Shown here: in pieces, positions 1,224-51,477 of the stretch | Numbering within the stretch: position 1 is the first letter of the stretch | Layout of the letters: every line of letters begins with the position of its first letter | Program-made: the position numbers and the translations under genes | The notes under the pieces: model-generated | Database searches by the model: none | Seen by the model: the letters and a program-made list of their open reading frames with translations, nothing else | What the model was told of the DNA's origin: nothing | From: Raja brachyura | Lineage: Eukaryota | DNA length: 64,000 bases | Reading direction: 5' to 3' | Assembly: GCA_963514005.1 (NCBI GenBank) | Contig: OY740804.1 | Span: 19,344,001-19,408,000, forward strand

Positions 1224-1541
1224 CTGGGACCGGGGCCGCCACTAGCACCGTGACCGGAGCTCGGGGACACTCGGTCTCTTTACCTGCTGGGATCACAGTC
1301 ACACCGAACATTACGAACGTTGTGTGGAGGCGGGCATCCCCCAGATTCAAGATAGCAGAACACTCAAAAGGGAACATTGAATATTATAACGCCAATTACA
1401 GGGGACGGGTAACTCTTCACCCCAGGAACTTCAGTCTGGAAATCCATGATCTACGGGGAGAGGACGCTTGTGAATATGAGGTGACTTTTGGAACAAGTTC
1501 AGGAGATGAAACTCAGGCAAGAATCCGACTGGAGGTGTACG
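1224..1541 (+). CDS. Gene A (SLAM/CD2-family receptor, ITSM-bearing): IgV exon
   Basis: Acceptor ctcttgtctcctcag|ct and donor tac g|gtgagt, 318 nt, phase 1/1. Translation AGTGAATSTVTGARGHSVSLPAG...VVWRR...YRGRVTLHPRNFSLEIHDLRGEDACEYEV...IRLEVY is a V-set domain lacking the canonical B-F disulfide, a hallmark of CD2/SLAM N-terminal domains. Leader exon not found in the window. Confidence 0.92.
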
Positions 1542-2159
1542 GTGAGTGAGACTGCCACAGAGGTCCCGGGTTTCACCGGCTCCTGAACCCGTCTAATTAA
1601 TTGGTGAGGGCAGATCCTGTGCGTTCCCCAGTTTACTGAACCCCACCGACTGCCAGTGTGTGGAGTGGGGGTCACGGCTGTAGTGCGACTGGGGCAGTGC
1701 CAGGCTGGGGGACAGACCCACCACATCCCCGGAGACTGGGCCAGGGGCCGCCAAGGAACAAAGTGTCAATGGGAAACCTCGTAGCTCCGAGGCTGAAGGA
1801 GCTGACACATGGGGAGGAAGGAAAGGATAGGGTGGGAGGGGTAGTTTAGATGGGCTGAACAGTCTGTATCTCTGAGACCTAGTTAAACAGACCCCACTGT
1901 ATCCACAGGTCAAAGGCCTTGTATGTTATGTTCAGGAATCCCAATTGTTCCATCAGTTTCCCACAGCTCTGCCTGTTCATTCCCAAGACCGCGGAGTAAG
2001 TTCACCAAGGTTTTTATTCCTCAGCCTCCATGCTTTACTGAGCGATGCCCTGTGTATTTATTCCACAGAATATGGTCCCAATCAGTGAGGCAGTGCACGT
2101 ACACAACAGCACACTCACACCCAGCAATATTGTTCCTATCTCACTCTTACAATAATATG

Positions 2160-3310
2160 TGCTTTGGAAGGTTAGATCGCATGGGATCCAAAGAGAGATA
2201 GCTGAATGGATAGCAAAGTGGCTCCATGGAAGGAAGCAGAGGGTGATGGTAGAAGGTTGCTTCTCGGACTGGAGGCCTGTGACTAGCGGTGTGCCTCAGA
2301 GTTCGGTGCTGGGCCCTTTACTGTTTGTCATCTACATCAATGATTTGGATGAGAACATTCAAGAGGGCAAGATTAGCAGGTTTGCTGATGATGCAAAAGC
2401 GAGTTGTTTTGCAGATAGTGAAGATGGTTGTGAAATATTGCAGCAGGATCTGGATCATTTGGCCAAGTGGGCGGAGGAATGGTTGATGGAAATTAATACA
2501 GAAAAGTGTGAGCTGTTGCATTTTGGGACGTCGAACACGAGCAGGACCTGCACAGTAAATGGTAGGCCTCTGGGGAGTGTTGTAGAGCAGAGGGATCTAG
2601 GAGTGTAGGTGCATAGTTCCTTGAAGGTCGAGTCGCAGGTAGATAAGTTGGTCAAAAAGACTTTTGGCACATTGGCCTTCATCAGTCTGTGTATTGAGTA
2701 TAGAAGTTGGGAGGTCATGTTGCAGATGCATTTGTATAAGTCGTTGGTGAGACCGCATTTAGAATATTGTGTTCAGTTCTGGGCACTATGTTACAGGAAA
2801 GGTATTGTCGAGCTTGAAAGGGTTCAGAAAGGATTTACGAGGATGTTGCCAGGACTAGAGGGTGTGAGCTGTTGGGAGAGGTTGAGTAGGCTGGGTCTTT
2901 ATTCCATGGAGCACAGGAGGATGAGGGGAGATCTTATAGAGGTGTACAAAATCATGAGAGGAATAGATTGAGTAGATGCACCGAGTCTCTTACCCAGAGT
3001 AGGGGAATCGAGGACTAGAGGACATAGGTTCAAGGTGAAGGTGAAAAGATTCAATAGGAATCTGAGGGGTAACATTTTAACCCAAAGGGTGGTGGGTGTA
3101 TGGAACAAGCTGCCAGAGGAGGTCGTTGAGGCTGGGACTATCCCATCGTTTAAGAAACAGTTAGACAGGTACATGGATAGGACAGGTTTGGAGGGATATG
3201 GACCAAGCGCAGGCAAGTGGGGCTAGTGTTGCTGGGACATGTTGGCCGGTGTGGACAAGTTGGGCTGAAGGGCCTGTTTCCACACTGTATCACTCTATGA
3301 CTCCGACTCT
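2160..3310 (+). mobile_element. CR1-type LINE 3' portion
   Basis: SGVPQSSVLGPLLFVIYINDLD, FADD, LVRPHLEYCVQFW and TQRVVGVWNKLP, with stops and a short tandem tail (ctctatgact). Confidence 0.9.
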
Positions 3311-4309
3311 ATATAACGTTCACAATAATCTCACCCAGCAGCGTCTGGCTGGGAAATCTTCCCTCCTTCATCCCAGGGATAACCAGTTCCCATGGTAGGG
3401 GGGAGAACATCAGAGCATGGAATATGAGCAGGAAGAGGCAATTTGGCCCTTCAAGCCTGCTCCCCACTCATTGAGATCAGCAATGGTCTGACCTTGGCCT
3501 CAGCTCCACTTTCCTGCCTGTATTGCACTTCAATATTTTTGCACTATTCCAGTATTATTGGGGGTTTTCTCTTGCACCATTCCACAGTATTGTGCCAGTC
3601 GTATATTTATTATTCTCTTATTGTTACTACGCACACTGCTTACGCCATGTCATGTAAGCAAGGAATTTCACTGCACCTTGACCAGATGATAATAAATTAA
3701 TCTAAACCTGACAATTGAGTGATTGATTGGTTGATGCTTTCTTGTTACATACACTCGGTGCAGTGAAATTATTTGTTTTGCATACAATACACACATGCGC
3801 AAAGAGTCGCCACATATAGGCTGCCGACGAAGTTACAAACGTCTTCAATATAGTCCCGATGGTCCCTTGTTGCTCTTGGTGCCCCCACACTCCCCCATCC
3901 CCCATGCCGGGTCCCTCTTTGTTCAGAATCAGAATCGGAGTCTGAATCTATTGCACACATTCCCGCCTTCCCTCCAGAACAAAGTTCTATCTGTCTTGGC
4001 CTTAAATACTTTTCCCGACTTGGCCTCCACAGCTCTCCGAGGGAGAATTCCACTGATTTCTAACCCTCAGCGAGAAGGAATTTCTCAATTTCCCCATCTG
4101 ACAAGGACAGCCCCTTATCCTGAATCTCTAACCCATGATCCCATTCCGCCTGTCTCTGTTTCTTGTCCTCCCCCACTGGAGGTCGTTTCTCTCAGTCCCC
4201 TCTGCCCATACTGATCAATACGTTAAAAATGTCCATCAGGTGTGTAAGAGACATGGGGACCACTCACAGGAGTGACAAAATACATGGAACTGAGGAGAAT
4301 TCCCAAGAT

Positions 4310-4580
4310 AAAGAGCCATGAAACCTGTGCAGACAGGAGATTTTGCAGAGATCTTCATTCTCTCATTACTGAAGTCTGAGGTTCCCACCTGCTTTAAGAG
4401 GGCATCTATAATAAAAATTCTGGTAAGGCAACATACTCTTCCAAAAGAGTAGGGCGACATGCCTCAATGATTATCGATCTGTGGCACTAACGTCCGTGGC
4501 GATGAAGTTCTTTGAGAGATTGGTTATGGTGCATATCAACTCCTACCTCAACAAAAACCTCAACCCATTACAATCTGCGC
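4310..4580 (+). mobile_element. Rex1/Babar-like non-LTR RT fragment
   Basis: CLNDYRSVALTSVAMKFFERLVM resembles the Rex1-type RT motif. Confidence 0.65.
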
Positions 4581-4966
4581 ACTGCAAATTTCTCATGTTT
4601 ATTATATTATTTACAGATTACTATGTTTACATATTCTGTTGTGCTCCTGAAAGTAAGAAGTTCATTGTTCTCTACGGGACCTTTGATAATATCACACTTT
4701 TGACTCTTGGCTGTAAACAGGACACTGTTGGGAGTTTGAGGATGATTGCGGGCAGTGGTCGGGAAGGGAGCACAGCACGTGTGGACTTCCTCCAGCAACA
4801 ACTGTCTGAACTGTCTGAAGGGGGAGGGAAGAGATAAACTGATGGGTGGAAATGAACTGGCATTGACTTAAAGCTCACTGGTGACTGTTGGAGACAGGAT
4901 GTTGGGTTTCGAGGGGTCGACAAGGATCTCCTTTACTCATCTTTCTTCTTTCTGCCCCAACCTCAG

Positions 4967-5245
4967 AGCCCGTGGCAGGAACACAGATCGAGGCTGACAT
5001 CACCGAGATCTGCAACTTCACCCTGACCTGCTCCGTAACCTCCGGTGGCCCCATCAGCTTCACGTGGTGGAGGGAAGCTTTGGGAAACGACAACACCCGT
5101 CACCTCGAGGGGCACGGAAATACAACACATGTTTATCAGACAGCAGAGGTCGGGGACGTTGTGTACAGGTGTGAGGCCAGTAACCCGGCCAGTGAGGGCA
5201 CGGCAGAGATCCAGCTGAAGGATATCTGTAACCGGACCACATTTG
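4967..5245 (+). CDS. Gene A: IgC2 exon
   Basis: Acceptor ctttcttctttctgccccaacctcag|ag and donor ttt g|gtgagt, 279 nt, phase 1/1. EPVAGTQI...CNFTLTCSVTSGGPISFTWWRE...YRCEASNPASEGTAEIQLKDICN has the four-cysteine C2 pattern and the CxASNPxS motif typical of SLAM/CD2 domain 2. Confidence 0.92.
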
Positions 5246-5555
5246 GTGAGTGTCAAAGTGATGATCCCAGGTTATTGGGAGGACAGTAATGTGTTTGTTC
5301 ATTGGGAGAGTGTATTGGGAGTGTGGGATGGAACAGTGTGGAGGGAGCTACACTCTATATTTAATCCATGCCTCAGGAGTGTGTGGAATTATGGCATAGA
5401 GGCACTAGGCCACATCTAATCCATGCCTTGGAAGGGATTTAATAAATAATTGAACATTATTCTGTTCCCAAACCTTTCAACGCCATCTTTTTAAGCCACC
5501 GCTGAGGTTGAAGTGTTACCTCTGCCCAGAATGCACTTCAGCTTTGTGGATTCAT

Positions 5556-6232: not shown

Positions 6233-6314
6233 CTGCCACACTCTCCACCCTTGGTCCCATTCAGGCAGGGCTCCTCACCCGCATCCACCATGCAGAATGA
6301 TCATCACAGTTTAA

Positions 6315-7175
6315 GTTTGGTTTTAGTTTAGAGATACAACAGGGAAACATACCTTCACCAGACATCGATCACCCGTTCTCACTAGTTCTATGTTATCCCA
6401 CTGTTCACATTGACTCCTTCCACACTAGGGGCAACTTACAGAGACCAATTAACCTACAAACCCACACATCTTTGGGATGTGGGAGGAATGCGGAGCACTT
6501 GAAGAAACCCACGTGGAGACAGGGAGAACATGCAAACTACACTGGTCTCCAAATCTGAGGAAGGACATTATTGCCATAGAGGGAGTGCAGAGAAGGTTCA
6601 CCAGACTGATTCCTGGGATGTCAGGACTGTCTTATGAAGAAAGACTGGATAGACTCGGTTTATACTCTCTAGAATTTAGGAGATTGAGAGGGGATCTTAT
6701 AGAAACTTACAAAATTCTTAAGGGGTTGGACAGGCTAGATGCAGGAAGATTGTTCCCGATGTTGGGGAGGTCCAGGACAAGGGGTCACAGCTTAAGGATA
6801 AGGGGGAAATCCTTTAGGACCGAGATGAGAAGGACTTTTTTCACACAGAGAGTGGTGGGTCTCTGGAACTCTCTGCCACAGAGGGTAGTTGAGGCCAGTT
6901 AATTGGCTATATTTAAGAGGGAGAGATGTGGCCCTTGTGGCTAAGGGGATCAGAGGGTATGGAGAGAAGGCAGGTACGGGATACTGAGTTGGATGATCAG
7001 CCATGATCATATTGAATGGCGGTGCAGGCTCGAAGGGCCGAATGACCTACTCCTGCACCTAATTCCTATGTTTCTATGTCTATGTTTCTACACAAAGAGA
7101 ACACCTAAGAGGATCAAACCCAGGTCTCTGACATTGTGAGGCAGCAGTTATACCAACTACACCATGGTGCCGCCC
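6315..7175 (-). mobile_element. V-SINE-like tRNA-derived SINE split by a CR1 insertion
   Basis: SINE body 6315-6540 continues at 7090-7175; ctacac flanks both sides of the inserted CR1. Confidence 0.65.
6542..7090 (+). mobile_element. Young CR1 3' end with (tatgtttc) tail
   Basis: WSPNLRKDIIAIEGVQRRFTRLIPG...FFTQRVVGLWNSLP; near-identical to the inverted copy at 14561-15108. Confidence 0.92.
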
Positions 7176-14105: not shown

Positions 14106-14225
14106 GTACAGTTAATAAAACATTGATACCGGTCGTTGTCAGTGTGAGCGTTGTGGTCCTTGTCGTTGTGGTCTCTGCCATTGTGATTCGCATCAAACGC
14201 CATTCTAGAAGGGACAGGCCAGCAG
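14106..14225 (+). CDS. Gene A: transmembrane exon (uncharged TM)
   Basis: Acceptor ttttctcatctccag|gt, phase 1. GTVNKTLIPVVVSVSVVVLVVVVSAIVIRIKRHSRRDRPA is a hydrophobic span followed by a basic stop-transfer cluster. It ends at a non-canonical donor cag|GCAAGT, phase 1. Confidence 0.85.
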
Positions 14226-14560
14226 GCAAGTGTCTGACCCCTGAGGGCCAAAGGTCACAGCCCAGGGGGGAATATGGGGCGAGGGAGGAGGGGTGGTGTT
14301 CAGGGTACAGAAAAATCTCAACACGCTCTGTAAACCAGGGGACTCAGTCCAGGGGAAAAGGGTGAGGTGGGGTTGGCAGTGCAAGGTACAGGAAAGTGTC
14401 CCACACACACAGCCTCTGGACCAAGGGTTACCGCCCAGGGGAGGAGGTTAGGAGTGGGTGGGGTTCAAGATACAGGAAAGTCACAGCTTGAGAGGTCACA
14501 GCTCTGGACAGGATATAGAAAGGGGGCTGGGGTCAGGGTGAGGGGCCGGGGTGACGGGAA

Positions 14561-15708
14561 ACATAGAAACATAGAAACATAGAAATTAGGTGCAGGAATA
14601 GGCCATTCGGCCCTTCGAGCCTGCACCGCCATTCAATATGATCATGGCTGATCATCCAACTCAGTATCCCGTACCTGCCTTCTCTCCATACCCTCTGATC
14701 CCCTTAGCCACAAGGGCCACATCTAACTCCCTCTTAAATATATCCAATGAACTGGCCTCAACTACCCTCTGTGGCAGAGAATTCCAGAGACCCACCACTC
14801 TCTGTGTGAAAAAATTCCTTCTCATCTCGGTCCTAAAGGATTTCCCCCTTATCCTTAAGCTGTGACCCCTTGTCCTGGACGTCCCCAACATCGGGAACAA
14901 TCTTCCTGCATCTAGCCTGTCCAACCCCTTAAGAATCTTGTAAGTTTCTATAAGATCCCCTCTCAATCTCCTAAATTCTAGAGAGTATAAACCGAGTCTG
15001 TGCAGTCTTTGTTCATAAGACAGTCCTGACATCCCAGGAATCAGTCTGGTGAACCTTCGCTGCACTCCCTCTATGGCAATAATGTCCTTCCTCAGATTTG
15101 GAGACCAGAACTGTACGCAATACTCCAGGTGTGGCCTCACCAAGACCCTATACAACTGAAGTAGAACCTCCCTGCTCCTATACTCAAATCCTTTTGCTAT
15201 GAAAGCTAACATACCATTGGCTTTCTTCACTGCCTGTTGTACCTGCATGCCTACTTTCAATGACTGGTGTACCATGACACCCAGGTCGCGCTGCATCTCC
15301 CCTTTTCCTAATCGGCCACCATTTAGATAGTAGTCGGTTTTCCTATTTTTGCCACCAAAGTGGATAACCTCACATTTATCCACATTATACTGCATCTGCC
15401 AAACATTTGCCCACTCACCCAGCCTATCCAAGTCACCTTGCATTCTCCTAGCATCCTCCTCACAGCTAACACTGCCCCCCAGCTTAGTGTCATCCGCAAA
15501 CTTGGAGATATTGCCTTCAATTCCCTCATCCAGATCATTTATGTATATTGTAAATAGCTGGGGTCCCAGCACTGAGCCTTGCGGTACCCCACTAGTCACT
15601 GCCTGCCATTGTGAAAACGATCCGTTAACTCCTACTCTTTGCTTCCTGTTTGCCAGCCAGTTCTCTATCCACATCAATACTGAACCCCCAATGCCATATG
15701 CTTTAAGT
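14561..15708 (-). mobile_element. Young 5'-truncated CR1 with an uninterrupted 338-aa ORF2 C-terminus
   Basis: [31 protein letters not shown] and LVRPHLEYCVQFWSP; (tatgtttc)n tail at 14561-14585; lies in the gene A intron after the TM exon. Confidence 0.95.
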
Positions 15709-15929: not shown

Positions 15930-16018
15930 ACCCAGGGCCCACAGAGACTATCTACGCACAGGTTGAGCAACCACAGAGACGTCCTGCCAAACGGCAGCCT
16001 CCGGAGGGATACGAGACG
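15930..16018 (+). CDS. Gene A: cytoplasmic exon 1 with ITSM (TIYAQV)
   Basis: Acceptor ctctctctctgccccacag|ac; phase 1 matches the TM exon. Reads DPGPTETIYAQVEQPQRRPAKRQPPEGYET, with donor acg|gtaacg in phase 0. This frame is not in the ORF track. Confidence 0.85.
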
Positions 16019-16124: not shown

Positions 16125-17070
16125 CACACACCCAGCTACTGGGGTTCACTGTCCCCACACTGCCAGTTACTGGGGTACACTGTCCCCACACACTAGTTAC
16201 TGGGGTACAGGATCCCTCGCACACCCAATTACTGGGGTTCACTGTCCCCACACTGCCAGTTACTGGGGTACACTGTCCCCACACACTAGTTACTGGGGTA
16301 CAGGATCCCTCGCACACCCAATTACTGGGGTTCACTGTCCCCGCACACTAGTTACTGGGGTACAGGATCCCTCGCACACCCAATTACTGGGGTTCACTGT
16401 CCCCGCACACTAGTTACTGGGGTACAGGATCCCTCGCACACCCAATTACTGGGGTTCACTGTCCCCGCACACTAGTTACTGGGGTACAGGATCCCTCGCA
16501 CACCCAATTACTGGGGTTCACTGCCCCGCACACTAGTTACTGGGGTACAGGATCCCTCGCACACCCAATTACTGGGGTTCACTGTCCCCGCACACTAGTT
16601 ACTGGGGTACAGGATCCCTCGCACACCCAATTACTGGGGTTCACTGTCCCCACACCGCCATTTACTGGGGTACACTGTCCCCACACCGCCAGTTATTGGG
16701 GTACACTGTCCCCCACACACCCATTTACTTGGGTACACTGTCCCCACAGACCCAGTTACTGGGGTACACTGTCCCCCACACTGCCATTTACTGGGGTACA
16801 CTGTCCCCACACCGCCAGTTATTGGGGTACACTGTCCCCCACACACCCATTTACTTGGGTACACTGTCCCCACACACCCATTTACTTGGGTACACTGTCC
16901 CCACACACCCAATTACTGGGGTTCACTGTCCCCACACCGCCAGTTACTGGGGTTCACTGTCCCCACACCGCCAGTTACTGGGGTACACTGTCCCCACACC
17001 ACCAGTTATTGGGGTACACTGTCCCCCATACACCCATTTACTGGGGTACACTGTCCTCACACACCCAGTC
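16125..17070. repeat. Minisatellite of 30-32-nt monomers with higher-order (93-nt and 62-nt) organisation
   Basis: Monomers such as ggggtacactgtccccacacactagttact and ggggtacaggatccctcgcacacccaattact are tandem with no unique spacers. Confidence 0.95.
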
Positions 17071-17159
17071 ACTGTGCTATGCCTACTTCTCTTTACACAG
17101 TTGAGTGTGTCCAGAGCGCAACGTCCCTTTGCTGTAAGCACTCTCTGCTTTCTCTACAG

Positions 17160-17318
17160 GTTCAGAGACAGGAGGAGAGAATTGAGATCCTTGCCTCCGT
17201 GTATGATACTGTCACCTCTCCTGGGACCTCAGGCATTGGATCACTGGCCACCCCTGGAAACTCCCCGCACTGTGAGCCAGGAGACGTCCATCCTCCACCC
17301 CAGCCCGGGGCCCACTGA
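17160..17318 (+). CDS. Gene A: terminal cytoplasmic exon with SVYDTV motif and stop
   Basis: Acceptor ctctctgctttctctacag|gtt; phase 0 matches the previous exon. VQRQEERIEILASVYDTVTSPGTSGIGSLATPGNSPHCEPGDVHPPPQPGAH* with TGA at 17316-17318. Confidence 0.8.
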   Translation, partial: VQRQEERIEILASVYDTVTSPGTSGIGSLATPGNSPHCEPGDVHPPPQPGAH

Positions 17319-22300: not shown

Positions 22301-22350
22301 TCATTCAGTCTTGTGAGGCCTGTCTGCAGTTCCACTGACAGGGCGGGCGC
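22301..22350 (-). CDS. Gene B: terminal exon, short tyrosine-free cytoplasmic tail
   Basis: Branch-point-like ctgac plus ctctcctatctctctccccacag|gc, similar to the acceptor of gene A cytoplasmic exon 1. Phase 1 gives SARPVSGTADRPHKTE*. Confidence 0.7.
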
Positions 22351-24737: not shown

Positions 24738-24836
24738 TGATGATGTGGGTGATGACAATGACTGAGAGGAGAATCAGAAGCAGGACGGCAGCAATCGTGG
24801 CCCTCAGCCAACATCCACAGAGACAGCTTCTCAACC
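24738..24836 (-). CDS. Gene B (or relic third gene): transmembrane exon with intramembrane Arg
   Basis: Acceptor gagtaatcccctctctttcaccag|gg, resembling the gene A TM acceptor gagtaatc...ctccag. Phase 1/1, donor atc a|gtgagt. Reads GLRSCLCGCWLRATIAAVLLLILLSVIVITHII. Linkage to the 44784 exon across about 20 kb is inferred from phase, strand and the absence of another TM exon that I could find. Confidence 0.8.
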
Positions 24837-24964: not shown

Positions 24965-26152
24965 CTCCCAGAGCATGGACTGAACACTGCTGCAGAGTGC
25001 CTTGTCAAGATCAACGGCTCTTTGTTGGCCCCCATTCACTTTGGGAGGGGGTTTGTCAGGGATGTCCCATTTCCGGCCATCTATATTCTATCTGTGTGGA
25101 GCCATTCCTGTGCCTCCTACGGAGGCGGTTGGCAGAACTGGTTTTGCAGGGGCTGGGGTGGAGGTGGTTCTCTTGGCCTACGCCGATGATGTCATTTTGA
25201 TGTTCACCGACCCTGTTGATCTGCGGAGGATGCGTGAGTGCCAGCAGGATTTCTCGGCTGCGTCCTCCGCCAAGATCAACTGGGGGAAGTGTTCTGGTCT
25301 CATGGTGGGTCGGTGGCAGGTGGACTCCCTGCCGGAGGAGATGGCAGGTTTTGTGTGGATGCCCAGTGTACCGTTCCGTGACGCGAAGAGGCGCGTGTTG
25401 TGCAGGCCGCTCCTGCACACTCTCCACGTCCTCGCCCTCGTCGTATGTCCTGACACACCCTGGCGGTCCGTGTTACCACCTGACGGCGGGAGCGGTCCAC
25501 AGTGGAGGTCTCTCTACAAGGGAGTCCTCCCCCTTTACATCGGGGACCTGGGGTGGAGAGTGTTGCACAAAGCCATGTCCTGCAACAGGTACTTGAGCCG
25601 GTTCACAGACTCGTCCGCCGCCTGTCACTTCTGCGGCGAGGAGGAGTCCGTGTACCATTTGTACACGCAGTGTGAGAGGTTGCAGCCCATGTTCCAGTAT
25701 TTGAAGGGGCTGCTCCTCAGGTATTGGCTCCATTTTAGTTGGACGCTCCTGACTTTTGGGCACCTGGTACAGAGGGGGGAGAGTCGGGAGGAGGGAGGGG
25801 CGTCTCCCTGTCGGTCTGCTCCTGGGCCTAGCCAAGATGGCCATTCGCGGGTCCAGGCAGCGGGCAGTCAATGGCCGCACCGGGCTTGACTGCCTGCCCC
25901 TTTTCCGGGGTTACGTCCGTGCCCGTGTGTCCCTGGAGAGGGAACATGCGGTGTCGACAGGGACGCTGGAAGCCTTCCGTGAAAGCTGGTCACCGTGGGA
26001 GGTCGATTGGATTATAGACAAGGATGGCAGGTTTTTAATTTGAATTTTTGTCTTGTTTGTAAACTGCCGATACAGGCAGTTTTTGATATGAATGCTATAC
26101 TACTTTGTATGTTAATTTTGTTTTTGGAATAAAGTATTTGTAAAAAAAAAAA
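24965..26152 (+). mobile_element. Tx1/L1-clade non-LTR retrotransposon, internally deleted 3' part with polyA
   Basis: GVCQGCPISGHLYSICVEPFL, LAYADDV, DLGWRVLH and CHFCGEEESVYHLYTQC (C-terminal zinc finger); aataaa followed by an A-tail at about 26128-26152. Confidence 0.88.
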
Positions 26153-26548: not shown

Positions 26549-27040
26549 AGGTCACGGAGCTGGTCAGATTGAAGTTGCAGATATCAGTGATGTTCTGTGG
26601 CCTGATCTGTGTTCCTGACACTGGCTCTGAGGAGATACTTGTAAACCCCTTGATACCCAATAACCCGTCTCCAACAGCCACGAGCCACGAATGAGCCGAT
26701 CCCAGTTCATTTCCACCCACTAGTTTAATTCTTCCCTCCCCATTCAGTTCAGCCAGTTGTTGCTGGAGGAAGTCTACACGTGCGCTGCGCCTCCTTCCCG
26801 ACTACTGCCCGCACTCATCCACAAACTCTACACTGTGTCCTGTTTGTGGCTCTGTATCCTGGGAATTCTCTCCAGTTCCATGTCTTTTGTCACTCATTAA
26901 AAACCTGAGGGTGACCCAGCTCAGACCGGCCCTGAAACTGGCCAACAGTGGCAGCCCTGGGACTGTGATGGGCACAGACCCAGACTGGGTAGCGTGCTGT
27001 GTTCCAGAGTGAATCCAGCACATGCAGCTCCTGGGTCACA
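26549..27040 (-). pseudogene. Relic of a third SLAM-like copy: truncated IgC2 exon (26626-26549) plus homologous upstream intron
   Basis: Reads EPVSGTQIRPQNITDICNFNLTSSVT (B-strand Cys changed to Ser), then homology is lost. 26630-27040 aligns with the gene B intron 45065-45590 and partly with gene A 4720-4966, but the polypyrimidine tract is deleted. Confidence 0.85.
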
Positions 27041-30026: not shown

Positions 30027-30657
30027 AGGGTGGTTGCACGTAAGGTCATCGGGCCAAAGGGCGTGACACCAGGAGCAGGTTAATCCTTCTGGAGGACATG
30101 GCAGCCTCCGGCATACACTGTTAACACACAAAATGCGTACTTTCTTACCTGTTAAAAACTGCCGAAATGGTCAATTTTTGCGCTGGAAATAATTGTGGCG
30201 GGTGACTGAGCGCGCTGAACCAGATGCTCTTTGCTCTGAACCAGAGCACCAAGGCGTAAGCGGCCGAAGGAGCGCATCCCTCAGGACCGCCCCCATTCTC
30301 CCCCCGGGGTCAGCATTGTCCGGCCACAGCCCCCCTGACCAACCCCACCCCCCACGGCAACCCCCCAGTCTGGTCCCTCAGCCCACCCAGAGGCACTGAC
30401 CACGCTGCACCGGCACCCCGACCTCCGAACCCCCTGACCTCCGAACCCCCCCACCCCGGCCACGGGTATAGACGGCCCGGGGTCCACGAATGTGAAACCA
30501 GTCAGCGTGAAGTCCGGATGCTGGGACAGAAGAAGGGCCCGCTGTACTGACAGCCATAGTAAGTGCTTACCTGACGTTCACCATGTGTACTCCAGAAGGC
30601 GTTGCGTGGCAACAGTACGGTCACGGGTCATGACCTCAACTGCCGTGCAACCTCCCT
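30027..30657. mobile_element. Non-autonomous TIR DNA element (family uncertain)
   Basis: Imperfect TIR agggtggttgcacg...cgtgcaacctccct; the CR1 sequence resumes on both sides. Confidence 0.7.
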
Positions 30658-33103: not shown

Positions 33104-33104
33104 T

Positions 33105-42494: not shown

Positions 42495-43500
42495 CAGTGG
42501 CTTGCAAAAGTATTCATACCCCGTGAACTTTTCCACATTTTGTCACGTTACAACCACAAACGCAAATGTATTTTATTGGGATTTTATGTGATAGACCAAC
42601 ACAAAGTGGCGCATAATTGTGAAGTGGAAGGAAAATCATACATGGTTTCCAAATTTTATTACAAATAAAAAACTGAAAAGTGTGGCGTGCAAAAGTTTTC
42701 AGCCCCCCTGAATCAATACTTTGTAGAACCACCTTTTGCTGCAATTACAGCTGCAAGTCTTTTGGGGTATGTCTCTACCAGCTTTGCACATCTAGAAACT
42801 GAAATTTTTGCCCATTCTTCTTTGCAAAATAGCTCAAGCTCAGTCAGATTGGATGGAGAGCGTCTGTGAACAGCAATTATCAAGTCTTGCCAGAGATTCT
42901 CAATTGGATTTAGGTCTGGACTTTGACTGGGCCATTCTAACATACTAATATGCTTTGATCTAAACCATTCCATTGTAGCTCTGGCTGTATGTTTAGGGTC
43001 GTTGTCCTGCTGGAATGTGAACCTCCGCCCCAGTCTCAAGTCTTTTGCAGACTCTAACAGGTTTTCTTCCAAGATTGCCCTGTATTTGGCTCCATCCATC
43101 TTCCCATCTACTCTGACCAGCTTCCCCGTCCCTGCTGAAGAAAAGCATCCCCACAGCATGATGCTGCCACCACCATGTTTCACATTGGGGTTGGTATGTT
43201 CAGGGTGATGTGCAGTGTTAGTTTTCCGCCACACATAGCGTTTTGCATTTAGGCCAAAAACTTTAATTTTGGTCTCATCAGACCAGAGCACCTTCCTCCA
43301 CATGTTTGCTGTGTCCCTCACATGGCTTGTGGCAAACTGCAAACAGGACTTCTTATGGCTTTGTTTCAACAATGGCTTTTTTCTTGCCACTCTTCTATAA
43401 AGGCTTGATTTGTGGAGTGCACGACTAATAGTTGTCCAGTGGACAGATTCTCCCACCTGAACTGTGGATCTCTGCAGCTCCTCCAGAGTTACCATGGGTC
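42495..43500 (-). mobile_element. Tc1/mariner transposon, 5'-truncated, DD34E transposase ORF 43495-42713
   Basis: LWSDETK, FQQDNDPKH and SPDLNPIE with D-34-E spacing. One end TA|CAGTGGCTTGCAAAAGTATTCA with an inner direct repeat at about 42687 (IR/DR type). The N-terminal part and the other TIR are missing. Confidence 0.93.
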
Positions 43501-44783: not shown

Positions 44784-45062
44784 CAGGTGTGGCCTGTTTG
44801 CAGTTGTCCATCAACCAGATCTGTGCCGTGCCCTCACTGACCAGGTTCCTGGCCTCACACCTGTACTCAACGTCCCCGACCTCTGCTGTGTGATGAACCT
44901 CTATCGTCTCTCCGTGTCGCAGGGGGTGATGGGTGCCGTCCTTTCCCAGAGGTTTTCCCCACCACCACCTGAAGCTGGTGGAGTCACCAGAGGTCACGGA
45001 GCAGGTCAGGGTGCAGTTGCCGGCGATGTTCTGAATCTTAATCTGTGTTCCTGCCACGGGCT
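44784..45062 (-). CDS. Gene B: IgC2 exon
   Basis: Acceptor ctttcttctctctgccccaacctcag|ag and donor cct g|gtgagt, 279 nt. EPVAGTQIKIQNIAGNCTLTCSVTSGDSTSFRWWW...YRCEARNLVSEGTAQIWLMDNCKQATP, four Cys. Confidence 0.9.
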
Positions 45063-46249
45063 CTGAGGTTGGGGCAGAGAGAAGAAAGATGAGTAAAGGA
45101 GATCCTTGTGGACCCCACGATACCCAACAGCCACAAGTGAACAATCCCAGCTCATTTCCACCCACCAGTTTAACTCTTCTCTCCCCCCCCCCCCCACTTC
45201 AGTTCAGCGAGTTGTTGCTGTACGAAGTCCACATGTGATGCGCCCCCTTCCCGACTACTGCCCGCAATCATCCACCAACTCTCCACCATGTCCTGATTAT
45301 GGCCCTGTATCATGTGATAGGAGTAGAATTAAACCATTTGGCCCATCAAATCTACTCCGCCATTCAATCATGGATGATTGAACCTGGGGATTCTATCCAG
45401 ATGCAGGGTTTTTTTTTCACTTATGCAAATGGTCCCCGTGTCCCTTATGCACCCGAGTGTGACCCAGCCCAGGCCTGTCCAGAACCTGGTCCAAGAGAGT
45501 CAACCCTGGGACTGTGGTGGGCACTGACCCAGACTGGGATAGCGTGCCATGTTCCAGAGTGAATCCAGCACCATGCAGATCCTGGGTCACATGGCCTCTC
45601 TCCCACAGAGACTGAAACAGCTCACAAATCGGGGGTATAAATAGCGAGTTATTCCCAGTCTTGTGATGGGACACATTCTGAGAGGGGAACCAAGGAGTCA
45701 GAATGGAGAAAATGTCACAAGGGACAGAGCGGAGATCTGGAGCTGCAGAGTCACCCTCACTGAAAGCAGATACATGGGTAGAAAGGGCAGGGAAATCTCC
45801 TGATCACTGCCCCCCATCCTCAGCGGATGAACTAGATCTCCCCCATGTTGGACCACACTTAGAAAATGTCCTGAGACCAGCAAAGGCCAGAATGTCCTCT
45901 AGGTGGGGATTTCAATGTCCAACATGGGAGTGGGTTGGTAGCACCTCCACAGACTGAGCCGCCGACTCCTGACGGACAGACGGGCCAGAGTGGGCTGAGC
46001 AGGGGTAATCTGGCCTGACCTGGCCATCCCCAGGCTACCAGTGGCAGGTGCATCAGTCCCTGACACTAATGATGAGAGTTACCACTGTACAGTCCTTGTG
46101 GAGACAAGTCTGGTCTTCGCACCGAAGGCTCATCCCCATCATATTGTGTGGCACCTACAATTGTGCTCAGTGTGAGAGGCTCAGAAGAGATCATGCAGCT
46201 GACAACTGGGGTCCATATGGTCCTGCGGACAACAGCAGAACTGTCCACC

Positions 46250-48110
46250 ACGCAGTCTGTAACCTCATGGTTCACGCCACCATTCCTGTCACCGAGGGGT
46301 TCAACCCTGGTTCACTGAGGATCGCAGAGGACATGAGGAAGCAGCACCAGGTAGAAATAAACACAACGAGGTGCCAGCCTGGTGAAGCTGCGACACAGGA
46401 CGACATGCGACAACAACAGCCTCAAAAAAAGAGCTGAGGGACCTCGCGGCCTATGGCTCAGGTCACAGTTCTACAGTCCTACTACATCTGGACATGAATA
46501 GTGGTGGACAATTCAATAGCTCATCGAATGCAGCAGCCAAAAAAGCATCCCCATCCTCAGTGATAATGTGACCCAGCACGTGAGTGCTGGAGACAAGGTT
46601 GATCATTTACAACCGTGTTCAGTCAGAGTGCTGGAGTGGATGATCTCTGATCTTCTGAGATCCTACCGTCAAAGAAACCAGTGTCCAGACAATTTAGTTT
46701 ACTCCATGCAAAATCATGTTTATAAGTTATAGGAGCAGAATTAGGCCATTTGGCCCATCAAGTCTAAGCCGCCATCTAATCACAGTTGATCTATCTTTCC
46801 CTCAAACCCATTCTCCTGCCTTCTCCCCATAACCTCCGACACCTGTACTAATCAAGAATATATCAATCTCCACTGTAAAAATATCCATTGACTTTGCCTC
46901 CAAAGCCTCCTGTGACAATTAATTCCACAGATTCATCACCTTAAATAAATTCATCTTCATCTCCTTTCTAAAGGTATTGTATGTCCTTTTATTCCAAGGC
47001 TATGGCCTGTGGTCCTAGACTCAATTATCAATGGAAACATCTTCTCCACATCCAGTCTATCCAGGAAACACAGAGAGCCCCTATACATATCCAGCTCCAG
47101 GCAACATCCCAGCTATAGTACTGAAGACCTGCACTCCTGAAGTCGTGGCATGTCTCCCCAAGTTGTTTTTGCAACATTGGTATCCAGTGACAATGTGGAA
47201 AATTGACATCATCTTTGCAGTTCATAAACAGGATGAATCCAATCAGCTGATCACCTTCCAATTGATCTAGTATTGATCATCAGCAAAGTGAGAGAAGCTA
47301 TTGTTGACACTTTTATCATGCAGCACTCACTCGCCAATAACCTGCTCACTGAAGCTGAAGATCTTATCTGAAGACCTCATCACGGCTTTGGTCCAAGACT
47401 GAAACGAAAAACTGACTTGCAGAGATAAGGCGGAGCTGACTGTCCTCAACATCAACGCATTGTTTAACTGAGTCTGACATTAGGGAGCCCTTGTAAAACT
47501 AAAGTCAATGAACATCCAGGGGATAACACTCTGACGTGGAGTCACCCCTCACACGGAGGAAGATGGTTGTGGTCATTGGAGGCCAGTCAACCCAGCCACA
47601 GGTCATCGCTGCAGGTGTTCCTCAGGGCAGTATCCTGGGCCCAACCAGCTGCTTCATCAATGACCTTCCTGGCATCGCAACGTTTGACTGATGATGGCAC
47701 AATGTTGAACTCAACTGCATGCAGCAGGACCCAGAAAACATTCAAACAGGGGCTGATAAGTGGGAAGTTTGCAACCACGTGATGGAAGTGTCAGCAGGAG
47801 ACAGCCCAGTGCTTGAGACTCAATGATTCTCCCAGCAGCAAGCCCCACATTATCAAAACAATCGAACAGCAACTCAACAATACTAATTACACATACTCTG
47901 TGGCTACTGGAGAAAGTTTGAGGCTGGGTATCCCGTAGGAGTGACTCACTTCCTGACAGCCTGACCTTTCCCCGTCTACAGGACATGTCAGGAGTGTAAG
48001 GGAACACTCTTCCAATACCTGGGTGAGTGCAGCTTCAACATCTCTCGAGAAGTTGCCATCACCTGCAACTGAAGCAGCTGCTTAATCAGATCCCTACCCA
48101 CTACCCTAAA
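46250..48110 (+). mobile_element. Old degraded CR1/L2-like LINE (with a CR1 tail insert at 46720-47065)
   Basis: PGNIPAIVLKTCTPE and AGVPQGSILGP-like remnants with many frameshifts. Confidence 0.6.
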
Positions 48111-48627
48111 TACTCCCACCCTCCGCCAGCCTAAGCACTTCCTCCCCCATCCTAACATCATCCTTCTGCCAATCTAAGCACTTCCACCAAAACCTCAAGC
48201 ACTCCCTCTGTCCAATCCCTAAACATTCCATCCCTCTATCGACCCGAAACGTTGCCCATTTCCTTTGCTCCATAGATGCTGCCTCACCCGCTGAGTTTCT
48301 CCAGCATTTTTGTCATCCTTCCACAAATGTGGGTGGTGTGCATGTAATCCAGAAAATTCACCAGGGAGCCTGGAGGAAATTCCCTTCCCCATGGAGCAGT
48401 GGGAACCGTTGACGGTTCGATGGCCCAGTGACCGGGGATGTGGTGGGCCTGTCCCCCAGCCTGGCACTGCCCTAGTCCCACTACACTGGGACCGGGACCC
48501 CCACTCTGCACATTGGCAGTCAGTGGGGTTCAGTAAACTGGGGAACGCACAGGAACTGCTCTCGCCCATTAATTAGGGAGGTTCAGGAGCCGGTGAAATG
48601 CGGGGCCTCCGCGGCAATCTCACTCAC

Positions 48628-48945
48628 CGTACACCTCCAGTCGGACTCTCGCCGAAGTTTTATCTCCTGAACTTGCAACAAAATCCACCTCGTAATCACC
48701 AGCGTCCTCTCTCCGTAGATCACGGATTTCCAGAGTGAAGTTCCCGCGGTGAAGAGTTACCCGTCCCTTGTAATTGGTGACATAGTATTCAATATTCTCA
48801 TTCGAGTACTTCGCTATCATGGTTCTGGGTGATGGCCGCCTCCACGCAACGCTGGCATTGTCCGGTGCGACTGTGATCCCAGCAGGTAAGGAGACCGAGT
48901 GTCCCCGAGCTCCGGTCACGGTGCCAGTGGCGGCCCCGGTCCCAG
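48628..48945 (-). CDS. Gene B: IgV exon
   Basis: Same acceptor, donor and 318-nt length as the gene A IgV exon. AGTGAATGTVTGARGHSVSLPAG...VAWRR...YKGRVTLHRGNFTLEIRDLRREDAGDYEV...VRLEVY has no cysteine, giving a CD2/SLAM-type V domain. Confidence 0.92.
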
Positions 48946-50641
48946 CTGAGGAGACAAGAGAGGCAGTCAGCAGGAGAGCCCAGTGACTGGGGGAGGAATC
49001 GGACCTGGGAGAATCACACAGCACAGGAGCAGGCCATGCGGCCCATCGTCTGGCTCCCAGCTCTGTGAGAGACCCGGCCCACAGTTCCTACATCACACAG
49101 TGAGCCCACGGGGGGAACAGAGTGAAGACTCTCAGCACCCGGGGCCGAGGAAGGAAGTTGCAGCCGGCAGCCAGATATTGACGGACGGGTCAGGGGGGAA
49201 CAGACACGGCAAATGGGTCTGAAAAAGAAGGGGGATGGGGTGAGTTTGGAGAGAGTGAACATGGTGGAGGAACGGGGTAAATGGGAGGGTGTGAGTAGTA
49301 TGGGGGGGGGGGGGGGGGGGGGAGGAGCAGACCCCTGGAGTGCACTTACACAGATCCCTGAAGGAGGAAGTAAGGACAGGTGGGTGACTGAATACCACAC
49401 AAGCAACGACCAAAAGGTGAGAGCAACACGATCCAGGGAAAATTGGCAAATCGGATGCAAAATTATCTGGGTGATTGGAGGCAGAAGAAATTGGTAGAGG
49501 GTTGGTTTTGTTATTGGAACCCTGTGACCAGTCGTGTACTGCAGGGATTGTTGGGATTCTTACTCCCTGTGTACAATTAAAATGTTTAATTTGTAAATTT
49601 GCAGATGACACAAAAAAATCATTGGTGTCATTGGTAGGAGCATGGTCATAGACTGCAGAATGTACTATTTAGTCTTTGTTACGCTTGATCTAATTGTGTT
49701 GCCACTTTCAGGGAGTTGCGCATTTGGACCCCAAGTTCCCGCAGTATGTCAATGATGTTAAGGGTCTTGCAACGAACAATATACTTTTCCCTTACATTGG
49801 TCCTCCCAAATTGTAACACCTCACCCTTGCTTAGTTAGATCCAACCAGCTGCCATTTATCTGCTCATTTCTGTAGTTGATCTATATTCTGCTGTAATCTT
49901 TGACACCTTCCTCACTGTCTGCAACTCCACCAATATAAAATGTTATATATAATATTAAACACCCAACACAGATCCTTTTGGAACTCCATTGGTCCCAGAC
50001 CTCCAGCCAGAATATAACACACTTCTCCCACAACCTTCTGCCTTCAACGAGCGAGCCAGTTCTGAATCTGAATGACCAAGTCACTATGGATCCCATGAAT
50101 CTTAAATCAGGCCCTTCAGCCCAGTGCTACGAAACTACCTGGCTTCTCACCTCTCAATTCCAAACACCAACCATTTGCTGGTGAAAAGGCTCTTCATTTA
50201 TTGTGTATTCCCAACCTTGTTTTGACTCTCCAAACATCTCACCCCACACCTCAGGAGAAAACTTCATTTCCCTGCCCAGCTGACTGGATTCTCCTCCTCA
50301 GTTCTTCATTCTCCTCCTCATTGTCAATGACACTCAATTGTTGAACCTGCAAATTGACCCCTCTCTCTCTCTGTCTCTGTCTCTCTCTTTTTTCTCTCTC
50401 TCCCTCTCTTCATCTTCCCCCTCCTCCTCTCCCGTTTGCGTGTGTGAGAGGAACTGTCTCTGCTGTGCTGTGCCATTCTGTTATTAGACAGTTCACTTGG
50501 AGTTGGAGTTCATTGCTGTTATCCATCAGAGCTGATGATCTGAATGCCCAGAGCCCTGTAGAAGTCAGAAGCTGCTGTCAGGGTGCAATGACCTGGTTCT
50601 GATTGGGAAGGTGTTTGGTCAAACATTGCATCAAATAGTGG

Positions 50642-50653
50642 CAGGAAGTGGTT
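50642..50653 (+). promoter_or_regulatory. ETS-RUNX-like composite motif in intron 1 of gene B
   Basis: CAGGAAGTGGTT: an ETS core GGAAGT overlapping RUNX-like GTGGTT, in apparently non-TE sequence. Confidence 0.3.
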
Positions 50654-51416
50654 CAGGCACAGAACACTTTGCTGAACAAGAAGTATGTAAAGCGAAAAAT
50701 AGAGCTGGACTGTGGATGTAAAACGAGAGTTGTGGAGTGGGAGGTTGTTGAAGGGAGAGAGGGAGGGAGAGAGATAGCGAGGCACAAATGGCAATATTGT
50801 AGCAGCACCATACGTGGCGAATAAAGAGGAGACATCAGGTTGGTGCAACTGGTTCTTTATTCTGTTGTCACACATATAGTGGGTGCGCTAACTATATGTA
50901 GAGTTGTTGTAGCTGAGCGAGGTTGTGCCCTCGGGCTCAGCTACCGGTAGAAACTCCTGATGGATCTCGTGGTGAGAGAGCTTATGTACCAGGACACTCC
51001 CTCTGCCCATGACGTCGTGTGCCCGCCCTCTCCTGACGAGGGTTCGAGCTTAAGTGGCTGACGCCACAATATGATATTAACTACAGAGAGAGGTTTGTAG
51101 AGATGTCAGGAACCAGCAGAAAGTGACAGAGCTGGAGAAAGAGGCACAGAAATAGGGACAGTGAGAGAAGGAGTGTTTGGATAGAGAGATAAAGAAAGAT
51201 AACATCAGCAGAATGGAAGAGGGGCTGTGAATGACAGAGAGAGGGATGGAATGAGAGGCCAGTGTGTCCCACCTTTATGACAGTGTGGCAGCATTTGGGC
51301 TAGCATAAAGCCAGGAAATGACCACAATGGGTTGAATGGCCTTTATATGCACTGAAAACCTGCACAAGCCTCACACTCATCGATAACCAGAGTTGATCAT
51401 TAATATCTGTACTTAC

Positions 51417-51477
51417 CTACACAGACAGCAATGAGTGATGCACAGAGCAGGGAGGGCATCCTCCTCAAAGAAAACAT
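51417..51477 (-). CDS. Gene B (SLAM/CD2-family receptor, charged TM): leader exon
   Basis: aagATG (A at -3), then MFSLRRMPSLLCASLIAVCV and g|GTAAGT, a perfect phase-1 donor. Joined to the IgV exon it gives the signal peptide ...LLCASLIAVCVAGTGA. Confidence 0.85.

What the first reader, a model, noticed from the sequence alone, without database searches (positions are those of the whole stretch)
1224..51477. Convergent paired-receptor system: an ITSM/ITIM SLAM-like gene facing a charged-TM, tyrosine-free twin
Seen: two genes with closely related IgV-IgC2 ectodomains (V about 72% aa identity) point toward each other but end in opposite signalling modules. Gene A has a neutral Val-rich TM and a tail of about 94 aa with TIYAQV, YETV and SVYDTV. 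Gene B has CWLR-ATIAAVLLLILLSVIVITHII and a 16-aa tail with no Tyr. Every junction is phase-compatible. Established: this is the logic of paired receptors (LILRB/LILRA, PIR-B/PIR-A, KIR-L/KIR-S, SIRPa/SIRPb), and mammalian SLAM receptors signal through ITSMs and SAP/EAT-2 rather than through a charged TM. Inference: a SLAM/CD2-based inhibitory/activating pair in a probable cartilaginous fish, possibly a counter to pathogen decoy ligands. Charged-TM CD2/SLAM members may already be reported in amphibians or teleosts, so novelty needs a literature check.
Basis: partly seen in the sequence, partly recalled or inferred. Interest (0 to 1): 0.9.

Follow-up and report, generated by a model that had tools for sequence, protein, structure and literature searches.

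The report
Skate SLAM-like receptor pair, switch-motif versus arginine-TM
This stretch of a skate-like genome holds two convergent immune-receptor genes of the CD2/SLAM family, one with tyrosine switch motifs and one probably ending in a conserved arginine-bearing membrane anchor; the design is real and shared by sharks and rays, but whether the second gene uses that anchor here is unproven.

Summary

**Gene A (+):**
- V, C2 and a neutral TM, followed by a 94-aa tail carrying TIYAQV, YET|V and SVYDTV.
- Its leader exon lies off the window.

**Gene B (-):**
- Leader, V and C2.
- About 20 kb further on, past a dead C2 exon, a 99-nt Arg-TM exon and a 16-aa Tyr-free tail exon.

**Family:** sequence profile, Pfam, disulfide pattern and predicted fold all place both genes in CD2/SLAM.

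**The Arg-TM module:**
- It reads SCx3Cx2[R/K]...H plus a short tail.
- It recurs on V-C2 gene models in eight elasmobranch species.
- Those V domains cluster with ITSM siblings of the same lineage (up to 95% identity), the signature of paired receptors.

**Weak points:**
- No RNA evidence was obtainable, so the 44784-to-24836 junction rests on homology only.
- The Arg-TM exons may be left over from a third gene that lost its ectodomain.
- A and B are modest "twins", at 71% (V) and 59% (C2) identity.

**Prior knowledge:** arginine-TM CD2/SLAM receptors are already reported in Xenopus. Unchecked notes from this scan mention more SLAM genes, including another Arg-TM exon, on the same genome outside this window.

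The parts
1224..1541 (+). Gene A, IgV exon (318 nt, phase 1-1); no canonical B-F disulfide
   Evidence: Pfam V-set E=2.7e-8. 83% aa identity to the second V domain of Amblyraja XP_032898071.
4967..5245 (+). Gene A, IgC2 exon (279 nt, phase 1-1) with four Cys
   Evidence: Keeps 28 of 28 conserved family positions.
14106..14225 (+). Gene A, TM exon (120 nt): uncharged Val-rich TM followed by RIKRHSRRDRPA; GC-AG intron donor
   Evidence: The junction RDRPA|DPGPTE is matched by the Logan mRNA-contig protein P0157 and by Rhinoraja P0014.
15930..16018 (+). Gene A, cytoplasmic exon 1: ITSM TIYAQV; ends ...EGYET
   Evidence: 85% identical to the P0014 tail.
17160..17318 (+). Gene A, last coding exon: completes YET|V, holds SVYDTV, stop at 17316-17318
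   Evidence: 72% identical to the P0014 C-terminus.
51417..51477 (-). Gene B, leader exon (MFSLRRMPSLLCASLIAVCV, phase 1 donor gtaagt)
   Evidence: 15 of 20 residues identical to the leader of Amblyraja XP_032898521 (P0008).
48628..48945 (-). Gene B, IgV exon (318 nt, phase 1-1), no Cys
   Evidence: Pfam V-set E=3e-12. Best PDB match is SLAMF5 (CD84), E=3e-7.
44784..45062 (-). Gene B, IgC2 exon (279 nt, phase 1-1), four Cys. Reading through its donor gives G-E-stop.
   Evidence: 82% identical to the C2 of P0008.
26549..26626 (-). Dead C2 exon. The acceptor and first ~26 codons are kept (EPVSGTQIRPQNITDICNFNLTSSVT), the B-strand Cys is now Ser, and the rest of the domain is lost.
   Evidence: Keeps only 9 of 19 conserved positions. 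Most like the C2 of the Rhinoraja Arg-TM model P0154 (22 of 26).
24738..24836 (-). Arg-TM exon (99 nt, phase 1-1): LRSCLCGCWLRATIAAVLLLILLSVIVITHII; canonical ag/gtgagt sites
   Evidence: 30 of 34 identical to Amblyraja P0155 and 32 of 36 to Rhinoraja P0154.
22301..22350 (-). Short tail exon: (S)ARPVSGTADRPHKTE then stop; no tyrosine
   Evidence: 15 of 15 identical to the P0155 tail.

Best explanation
The window is part of a CD2/SLAM-family gene cluster of a skate-like cartilaginous fish.

Gene A is a SLAM-type receptor: V, C2, an uncharged TM, and a tail with one canonical ITSM plus two further Tyr motifs. By analogy with mammalian SLAM receptors it would recruit SAP/EAT-2-type adaptors or SH2 phosphatases.

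Convergent to it lies gene B, with an intact leader, V and C2. The only usable membrane anchor downstream on its strand is a conserved Arg-TM exon plus a 16-aa tyrosine-free tail exon. It lies 20 kb away, beyond a decayed C2 exon.

Most likely B is spliced to these exons, skipping the dead exon. That gives a V-C2-ArgTM receptor that cannot signal by itself and pairs through its membrane Arg with an Asp-bearing ITAM adaptor of the FcR-gamma/CD3-zeta/DAP12 kind.

Shown here: the exons, their phases, family membership, conservation of the Arg-TM module across elasmobranchs, and its attachment to SLAM V-C2 ectodomains in other species.

Inferred: the B-to-TM splice in this genome, adaptor coupling, and opposite signalling output.
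For: - Exon anatomy and canonical splice sites.
- CD2/SLAM membership:
  - The V domains lack the canonical disulfide and the C2 domains have four Cys.
  - Best PDB sequence match is SLAMF5, E=3e-7.
  - A family profile best matches the SLAMF6 V-C2 ectodomain at 3e-17, then CD48 and CD2.
  - The Pfam Receptor_2B4 family is hit by 19 of 32 relatives.
  - The AlphaFold model of homologue P0155 best matches NTB-A, CD2, CD48 and CD58, with TM-scores of 0.76-0.80.
- Gene A's tail and junctions match P0014 and the mRNA-derived P0157.
- The Arg-TM and tail recur on V-C2 models in Amblyraja, Rhinoraja, Hemitrygon, two Mobula species and Pristis. A Lys or Arg form occurs in Cetorhinus and Heptranchias. 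SC, C, R/K and H are invariant.
- No other credible TM exon, V relic or leader relic lies on the minus strand between 22 and 45 kb.
- B's V falls in the clade that also holds the Rhinoraja Arg-TM model P0154.
- B keeps 21 of 22 (V) and 23 of 26 (C2) conserved family positions.
Against: - No RNA run holds the locus. So no transcript supports 44784 to 24836.
- The intron would be 19.9 kb and holds a dead C2 exon with an intact acceptor. Its nearest donor-like site (cag|gtacag) would shift the frame.
- B's nearest relative, Amblyraja XP_032898521, is modelled as ending right after C2.
- The Arg-TM and tail exons match Amblyraja XP_032898070. That model has its own V-C2, and its accession number sits next to that of the gene-A-like XP_032898071.
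- The Arg lies at the outer edge of the TM, and there is no NxxR motif.
- Adaptor pairing is purely by analogy.
Confidence: 0.55

Rival explanations
1. The Arg-TM and tail exons, together with the dead C2 exon, are the remains of a separate third gene, the orthologue of Amblyraja XP_032898070. It lost its leader, V and most of C2. On this reading gene B is a TM-less product: a secreted V-C2 ending PGE-stop by read-through of the C2 donor, or a dying gene. There is then no functional A/B pair in this window.
For: - The dead C2 exon sits 1.7 kb upstream of the TM exon and resembles the C2 of Arg-TM models in other skates (22 of 26 to P0154).
- B's leader, V and C2 are closest to P0008, which is modelled without a TM.
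- The Amblyraja Arg-TM model has its own V-C2, and its accession number is adjacent to the A-like gene's.
- B's C2 has three changes at conserved positions.
Against: - NCBI models of this family often stop at the C2 donor even for A-type genes (P0152, P0153), so the truncated P0008 model says little.
- The TM and tail exons are intact, with perfect splice sites, and are 88-100% identical to Amblyraja, at least as conserved as the ectodomain exons.
- B has an intact leader and open V and C2 exons.
- All exons are phase 1-1, so skipping the relic keeps the frame.
Confidence: 0.3
2. B is joined to the Arg-TM exon but is not an activating receptor. It would be a tail-less SLAMF8/SLAMF9-like or decoy receptor, with the boundary Arg, His and Cys residues serving dimerisation or membrane positioning rather than ITAM-adaptor pairing.
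For: - NCBI names several of these models SLAMF8-like or SLAMF9-like.
- The Arg lies at the very start of the hydrophobic core, and the motif is CxxR, not the FcR-gamma-linked NxxR (PMC6557307).
- Two invariant extracellular Cys residues suggest disulfide-linked dimers.
Against: - A basic residue is invariant (R or K) at the outer-leaflet end of a type I TM across sharks and rays. That position goes against the positive-inside rule and is typical of adaptor-coupled receptors (established knowledge of LILRA, NKp46, GPVI and Fc-alpha-R).
- V domains stay matched to ITSM siblings within lineages, which is the behaviour of paired receptors.
Confidence: 0.15

Closest known systems
Mammalian SLAM-family receptors (SLAMF1, SLAMF5/CD84, SLAMF6/NTB-A, 2B4)
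   Same: - V domain without the canonical disulfide, followed by a four-Cys C2 domain.
- One Ig domain per phase-1 exon.
- A tail built from small exons carrying TxYxxV/I switch motifs.
- Best sequence and fold matches are SLAMF5, SLAMF6, CD2 and CD48.
- Gene A's TIYAQV fits the ITSM consensus TxYxxV/I/L (PMC3958483).
   Different: - No one-to-one orthology to any mammalian member was shown.
- The elasmobranch family is expanded and evolves fast: dN/dS is about 1 between A and B.
- Mammalian members are not known (my own knowledge) to use a charged TM. B-type members do carry one.
Xenopus CD2/SLAM-like receptors with NxxR transmembrane regions (Guselnikov et al. 2011, as cited in PMC4536121 and PMC6557307)
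   Same: An expanded CD2/SLAM family in which some members carry ITSM-type tails and others an Arg-bearing TM with a short tail. This is the paired activating and inhibitory logic on a SLAM scaffold.
   Different: - The elasmobranch TM reads SCx3Cx2[R/K]...H[IV]I. It has Cys, not Asn, three residues before the Arg, a conserved His at the inner end and two juxtamembrane Cys.
- Homology of the two TM types was not tested.
- The 2011 paper itself could not be read.
Classical paired receptor families (KIR, LILR/PIR, SIRP, CEACAM)
   Same: An inhibitory or switch-tailed member and a charged-TM short-tailed member share related ectodomains. Ectodomains stay matched within a lineage while the signalling modules are old.
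   Different: - The Ig scaffold is different.
- In this window the two ectodomains are only 71% and 59% identical.
- The activating arm is separated from its ectodomain exons by 20 kb and a dead exon.
SLAMF8 / SLAMF9 (short-tailed SLAM members)
   Same: V-C2 ectodomain, TM, and a short cytoplasmic tail without tyrosine motifs. NCBI's automatic names for several B-type models are SLAMF8-like or SLAMF9-like.
   Different: No evidence of orthology. The conserved basic residue, His and Cys signature of the elasmobranch TM is not a described feature of SLAMF8 or SLAMF9 (my own knowledge, not tested).

Membership tests
CD2/SLAM family | N-terminal V-set domain lacking the canonical B-F intradomain disulfide | tested here: met
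   Translations. V of B has no Cys. V of A has one Cys at a non-canonical position. Pfam V-set hits.
CD2/SLAM family | Membrane-proximal C2-set domain with two disulfides (four Cys) | tested here: met
   C2 of A and of B each have four Cys at conserved columns.
CD2/SLAM family | Closest sequence and fold relatives are CD2/SLAM ectodomains | tested here: met
   SLAMF5 3e-7. Profile against PDB: SLAMF6 3e-17, then CD48 and CD2, with CEACAM1 close behind. Foldseek: NTB-A, CD2, CD48 and CD58 on top. Pfam Receptor_2B4 hit in 19 of 32 relatives.
SLAM subfamily (ITSM signalling) | Cytoplasmic TxYxxV/I/L switch motif(s) | tested here: met
   Gene A has TIYAQV. GYETV and SVYDTV are non-canonical because they lack Thr at -2 (consensus from PMC3958483). 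Gene B's tail has no Tyr.
SLAM subfamily (ITSM signalling) | Binding of SAP/EAT-2 to the phosphorylated motif | not testable with these tools
   Needs biochemistry.
Paired activating/inhibitory receptors | Two members with closely related ectodomains | tested here: inconclusive
   A against B: V 71.4% and C2 59% aa. In other elasmobranchs the charged-TM member is 83-95% identical in V to an ITSM member of the same species. Monophyly of the charged-TM V domains is rejected (p-AU 4.5e-60; the group was named after the tree was seen).
Paired activating/inhibitory receptors | One member has a charged TM residue and a short tail without signalling motifs | tested here: inconclusive
   The exons exist and are conserved. 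Their splicing to B's V-C2 in this genome could not be tested.
Paired activating/inhibitory receptors | The charged-TM member associates with an ITAM adaptor | not testable with these tools
   No adaptor sequence of this species was available. Needs co-expression assays.
NxxR-TM, FcR-gamma-coupled receptors (LRC type, Xenopus FCRL and SLAM) | Asn three residues before the TM Arg (NxxR) | tested here: not met
   The window has C-W-L-R. All 12 elasmobranch homologues have C-x-x-R/K. Motif definition from PMC4536121 and PMC6557307.

The most novel reading that the evidence does not exclude
Elasmobranchs carry an old activating module for SLAM-family receptors: a TM exon reading SCx3Cx2[R/K]...H plus a ~16-aa tail. 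It has been conserved since sharks and rays split and is distinct from the tetrapod NxxR type. Its V exon is repeatedly re-matched, by conversion or exon exchange, to an ITSM-bearing sibling. In this skate the module has lost its own ectodomain exons and has been captured by the upstream V-C2 gene B. That would place SLAM-based paired receptors at the base of jawed vertebrates.
Probability: 0.4. Interest if true: 0.65.

Novelty: new member of a known kind. Interest (0 to 1): 0.5.

Why it matters
Mammalian SLAM receptors are taught as ITSM and SAP/EAT-2 signalling devices. Paired activating and inhibitory versions on this scaffold are so far described only in Xenopus.

A conserved charged-TM SLAM arm in sharks, rays and skates, kept matched to ITSM siblings, would show that this design is either ancient or repeatedly invented. 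It would also give comparative immunologists a defined module to test with elasmobranch ITAM adaptors.

For this particular window the value is smaller. It is one moderately diverged example, and its activating arm is structurally compromised and unverified.

Tried and rejected
**RNA evidence**
- The run search found only DNA-like holders and none on record as RNA.

**Other membrane anchors for B**
- A hydropathy scan of the minus strand from 17 to 51.6 kb gave only 24822 (the Arg-TM exon) and three poor candidates: 47886, 38289 and 20923.
- Those three were rejected because they are flanked by stops or lie in repeats or intron.

**Relics of a second V or leader exon between 26.9 and 44.7 kb**
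- None was found by tblastn or sensitive blastn.
- A 30% match at 30232-30351 (E=7.7) was treated as chance.

**Vestigial exons**
- There is no vestigial ITSM exon on B's strand and no Arg-TM exon on A's strand.

**Further database searches**
- A search for more skate Arg-TM proteins, or a four-domain version, found only P0155 and P0154.
- No protein encoded by the window itself is in the protein database.

**NxxR membership:** not met.

- Spliced models were searched exon by exon only.
- The Xenopus 2011 paper is not held, so it is cited only through PMC4536121 and PMC6557307.

Full report
**1. What is in the sequence**

The window is vertebrate DNA rich in LINE reverse-transcriptase and Tc1/mariner fragments.

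A self-comparison shows an inverted duplication:
- 1037-1743 (+) matches 49132-48421 (-) at 88% over 712 bp.
- 4714-5252 (+) matches 45299-44777 (-) at 78%.
- A third, partial copy of the second unit lies at 26845-26549 (-).

Reading the DNA gives these exons.

| Gene | Exon | Coordinates | Notes |
|---|---|---|---|
| A (+) | V | 1224-1541 | |
| A (+) | C2 | 4967-5245 | |
| A (+) | TM | 14106-14225 | GC donor, cag\|gcaagt |
| A (+) | cytoplasmic 1 | 15930-16018 | |
| A (+) | cytoplasmic 2 | 17160-17318 | ends in stop |
| B (-) | leader | 51477-51417 | |
| B (-) | V | 48945-48628 | |
| B (-) | C2 | 45062-44784 | |
| B (-) | TM | 24836-24738 | |
| B (-) | tail | 22350-22301 | ends in stop |

- All acceptors are AG. 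All donors are GT except the one GC donor.
- All Ig, TM and tail junctions are phase 1.
- Gene A's leader exon is not in the window. In B the leader lies 2.5 kb upstream of V, which for A would fall before base 1.
- Gene A's tail after the TM is 94 aa. It contains TIYAQV, a YET|V built across the last junction, and SVYDTV.
- Gene B's TM exon reads LRSCLCGCWLRATIAAVLLLILLSVIVITHII. Its tail is S-ARPVSGTADRPHKTE, with no Tyr.
- V identity is 71.4% and C2 identity 59%.

**2. Family**

- Both V domains lack the canonical disulfide, and both C2 domains have four Cys.
- Pfam gives V-set and Ig hits, plus a sub-threshold Receptor_2B4 hit for B.
- Against solved structures, B's V is closest to SLAMF5/CD84 (3e-7). 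CD2, CD48 and SLAMF6 also appear.
- A search of 1.8 billion representatives found 90 proteins at E<=1e-10. The closest single-V ones are NCBI models from skates, rays, sawfish and sharks. Their automatic names are SLAMF5/8/9-like, CD48-like or Ly-9-like.
- A profile of 32 of them best matches the two-domain SLAMF6 ectodomain (3.3e-17), then CD48/CD2 and CEACAM1. Of the 32, 19 hit Pfam Receptor_2B4.
- An AlphaFold model of the Amblyraja homologue P0155 (pLDDT 82.6) is closest to NTB-A, CD2, CD48 and CD58.

Membership in the CD2/SLAM family is well supported. The nearest relatives (79-83% in V) are from Rajidae, so the source is most likely another skate.

**3. Gene A**

- Rhinoraja P0014 and P0157 have the same architecture and tail as gene A. 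P0157 is a 333-aa protein from a 1361-nt Logan contig, so it derives from mRNA.
- Their tail reads ...PADPGPxETxYAQVEQPQ...PPEGN..V...YDT...
- This confirms the GC-donor junction (RDRPA|DPGPTE) and the cyt1-to-cyt2 junction by homology.
- TIFAQV-type checking against the consensus: TIYAQV fits the ITSM consensus TxYxxV/I/L (PMC3958483). That motif binds SAP and EAT-2, or SHP-1/2 and SHIP when those adaptors are absent. The tail is thus a switch, not simply inhibitory.

**4. The Arg-TM module is real and old**

The same TM and tail occur on V-C2 models in these species:
- Amblyraja: P0155, 270 aa.
- Rhinoraja: P0154 and P0160.
- Hemitrygon: P0164, plus a V-only form P0016.
- Mobula birostris and M. 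hypostoma: P0162 and P0173.
- Pristis: P0169.
- Sharks: a Lys form in Cetorhinus (P0071, P0190, P0202) and an Arg form in Heptranchias (P0201).

In an alignment of 12 of these sequences with the window's exon, the invariant positions are S-C-x3-C-x2-[R/K], two Leu and a His 19 residues after the basic residue.

The window's TM exon is 30/34 identical to P0155, and its tail is 15/15 identical.

The motif is CxxR, not the NxxR of LRC-type and Xenopus receptors.

**5. Paired-receptor behaviour at family level**

- On the V tree, charged-TM members sit next to ITSM members of the same lineage in Pristis, Hemitrygon, Mobula, Cetorhinus, Heptranchias and the skates.
- There are 10 changes of state for 11 charged against 25 ITSM rows. 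Forcing the charged-TM V domains into one clade is rejected (delta lnL 458, p-AU 4.5e-60). The caveat is that the group was named after the tree was seen.
- V identity between a charged-TM member and its nearest ITSM member:

| Lineage | V identity |
|---|---|
| Hemitrygon | 95% |
| Cetorhinus | 93% |
| Mobula | 88-90% |
| Heptranchias | 83% |
| Pristis | 73% |
| Rhinoraja | 72% |

- On the C2 tree the ray charged-TM and ITSM lineages are sister clades that predate the species. In rays, therefore, it is the V exon that has been homogenised within species.
- This is the signature expected of paired receptors.

**6. A versus B in this window**

- The intron in front of V is 94.7% identical. The V exon is 85.8% identical and the intron behind it 88.1%.
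- dN/dS is 1.06 for V and 1.17 for C2.
- B keeps 21 of 22 (V) and 23 of 26 (C2) family-conserved positions. A keeps 21/22 and 28/28.
- At 71% and 59%, the two ectodomains are the least alike of all the pairs seen.

**7. Does B own the Arg-TM exon?** This is the weak point.

In favour:
- It is the only credible TM exon on the minus strand downstream of B.
- No V or leader relic lies between 26.9 and 44.7 kb.
- The TM and tail exons are intact and conserved.
- All exons are phase 1-1, so skipping the relic keeps the frame.
- B's V clade contains the Rhinoraja Arg-TM model.

Against:
- A dead C2 exon at 26626-26549 lies 1.7 kb upstream of the TM exon. Its Cys is replaced by Ser, only 9 of 19 conserved positions are kept and the rest is lost. 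It resembles the C2 of the Arg-TM models of other skates.
- B's leader, V and C2 are closest to Amblyraja XP_032898521, which is modelled as ending at the C2 donor (PGE-stop).
- The Arg-TM exons match XP_032898070. That model has its own V-C2, and its accession number is adjacent to that of the A-like XP_032898071. This is only a weak hint about gene order.
- Models of this family often stop at the C2 donor (P0152, P0153), so the truncated model is weak evidence either way.

The most economical history is that a deletion or decay removed the inner leader, V and C2 of an Arg-TM gene. That left B's V-C2 as the only ectodomain able to use the module.

I put the B-to-TM splice at roughly 55%.

**8. 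Evidence I could not get**

- No RNA run was found.
I worked beside them and sent none of their letters to any search tool.
- Spliced proteins were never joined. Exons were searched one by one by reference, and the joined step was left out.

**9. Literature**

[quoted passage not shown] This comes from PMC4536121 and PMC6557307, both citing Guselnikov et al. 2011, which is not held.
- slamf genes are noted inside the elasmobranch MHC region (PMC10751288).
- I found no paper describing charged-TM or paired SLAM receptors in cartilaginous fish. The library is incomplete.

**10. Verdict**

- The principle is known from amphibians, and the sequences exist as unnamed automatic models. What is new is the recognition of a conserved elasmobranch Arg/Lys-TM SLAM arm kept matched to ITSM siblings.
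- This window is a structurally compromised, unverified example of it.
- Other unchecked first-reader notes on the same genome report further SLAM genes, including an intact six-exon tyrosine-free one with a 99-nt Arg-TM exon about 39 kb beyond the window.

Noticed in passing
window 26549-26845 (-): Dead C2 exon with about 220 bp of its upstream intron still alignable to the C2-upstream introns of A and B (72-73% nt). The acceptor is intact, the B-strand Cys is now Ser, and the 3' two thirds of the domain are missing. A cag|gtacag site at about 26467 would shift the frame if used as donor.
   Followed up: yes
window 16125-17074 (+): Long tandem array with many offset self-matches at 80-89% identity, lying in the intron between gene A's two cytoplasmic exons. 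It translates as repeated ...YWGTLSPHT... units.
   Followed up: no
window 6542-7088 and 14558-15108: Two LINE reverse-transcriptase fragments 96.9% identical to each other in opposite orientation, both inside gene A introns. This points to recent retroelement activity in the locus.
   Followed up: partly
window 42713-43495 (-): Open 260-aa Tc1/mariner transposase ORF (HTH_Tnp_Tc3_2 2e-15, DDE_3 7e-13) inside the proposed 20-kb intron of gene B.
   Followed up: partly
window 25002-25889 (+): LINE RT and zf-RVT fragment between the dead C2 exon and the Arg-TM exon. It may be linked to the loss of the exon's 3' part.
   Followed up: no
window 51948-52094 and 52148-52359: Two runs of N (assembly gaps or masking) in a low-complexity Pro/Ser/Leu-coding repeat 0.5-0.9 kb upstream of gene B's start codon, so B's promoter region is incompletely known. 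They were not filled.
   Followed up: no
window 1037-1223 and 48946-49132: The intron in front of both V exons is 94.7% identical, more than the exons, and holds a short motif that recurs at the ends of retroelement copies elsewhere in the window (for example 28309, 29571, 33675, 41604). The A/B duplication or conversion tract therefore postdates that insertion.
   Followed up: partly
Rhinoraja model P0154 (XP_078277104), residues 1-112: The N-terminus of this NCBI model translates the antisense strand of a C2 exon start and its upstream intron. It matches window 4884-4970 (-), and 45059-45606 and 26941-26988 (+). This is probably a gene-model artefact and also a sign of an inverted C2 fragment upstream of that gene.
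   Followed up: partly
Hypanus P0168 and Mobula P0175: These 'isoform X2' models join C2 directly to the short tail (..KLDKSG|S[RH]PGTGAE..), skipping the 99-nt TM exon in frame. They are possible soluble isoforms of the Arg-TM receptors.
   Followed up: no
They lie in a low-complexity repeat about 400 bp upstream of the tail exon and were not sent to any search tool afterwards.
   Followed up: no
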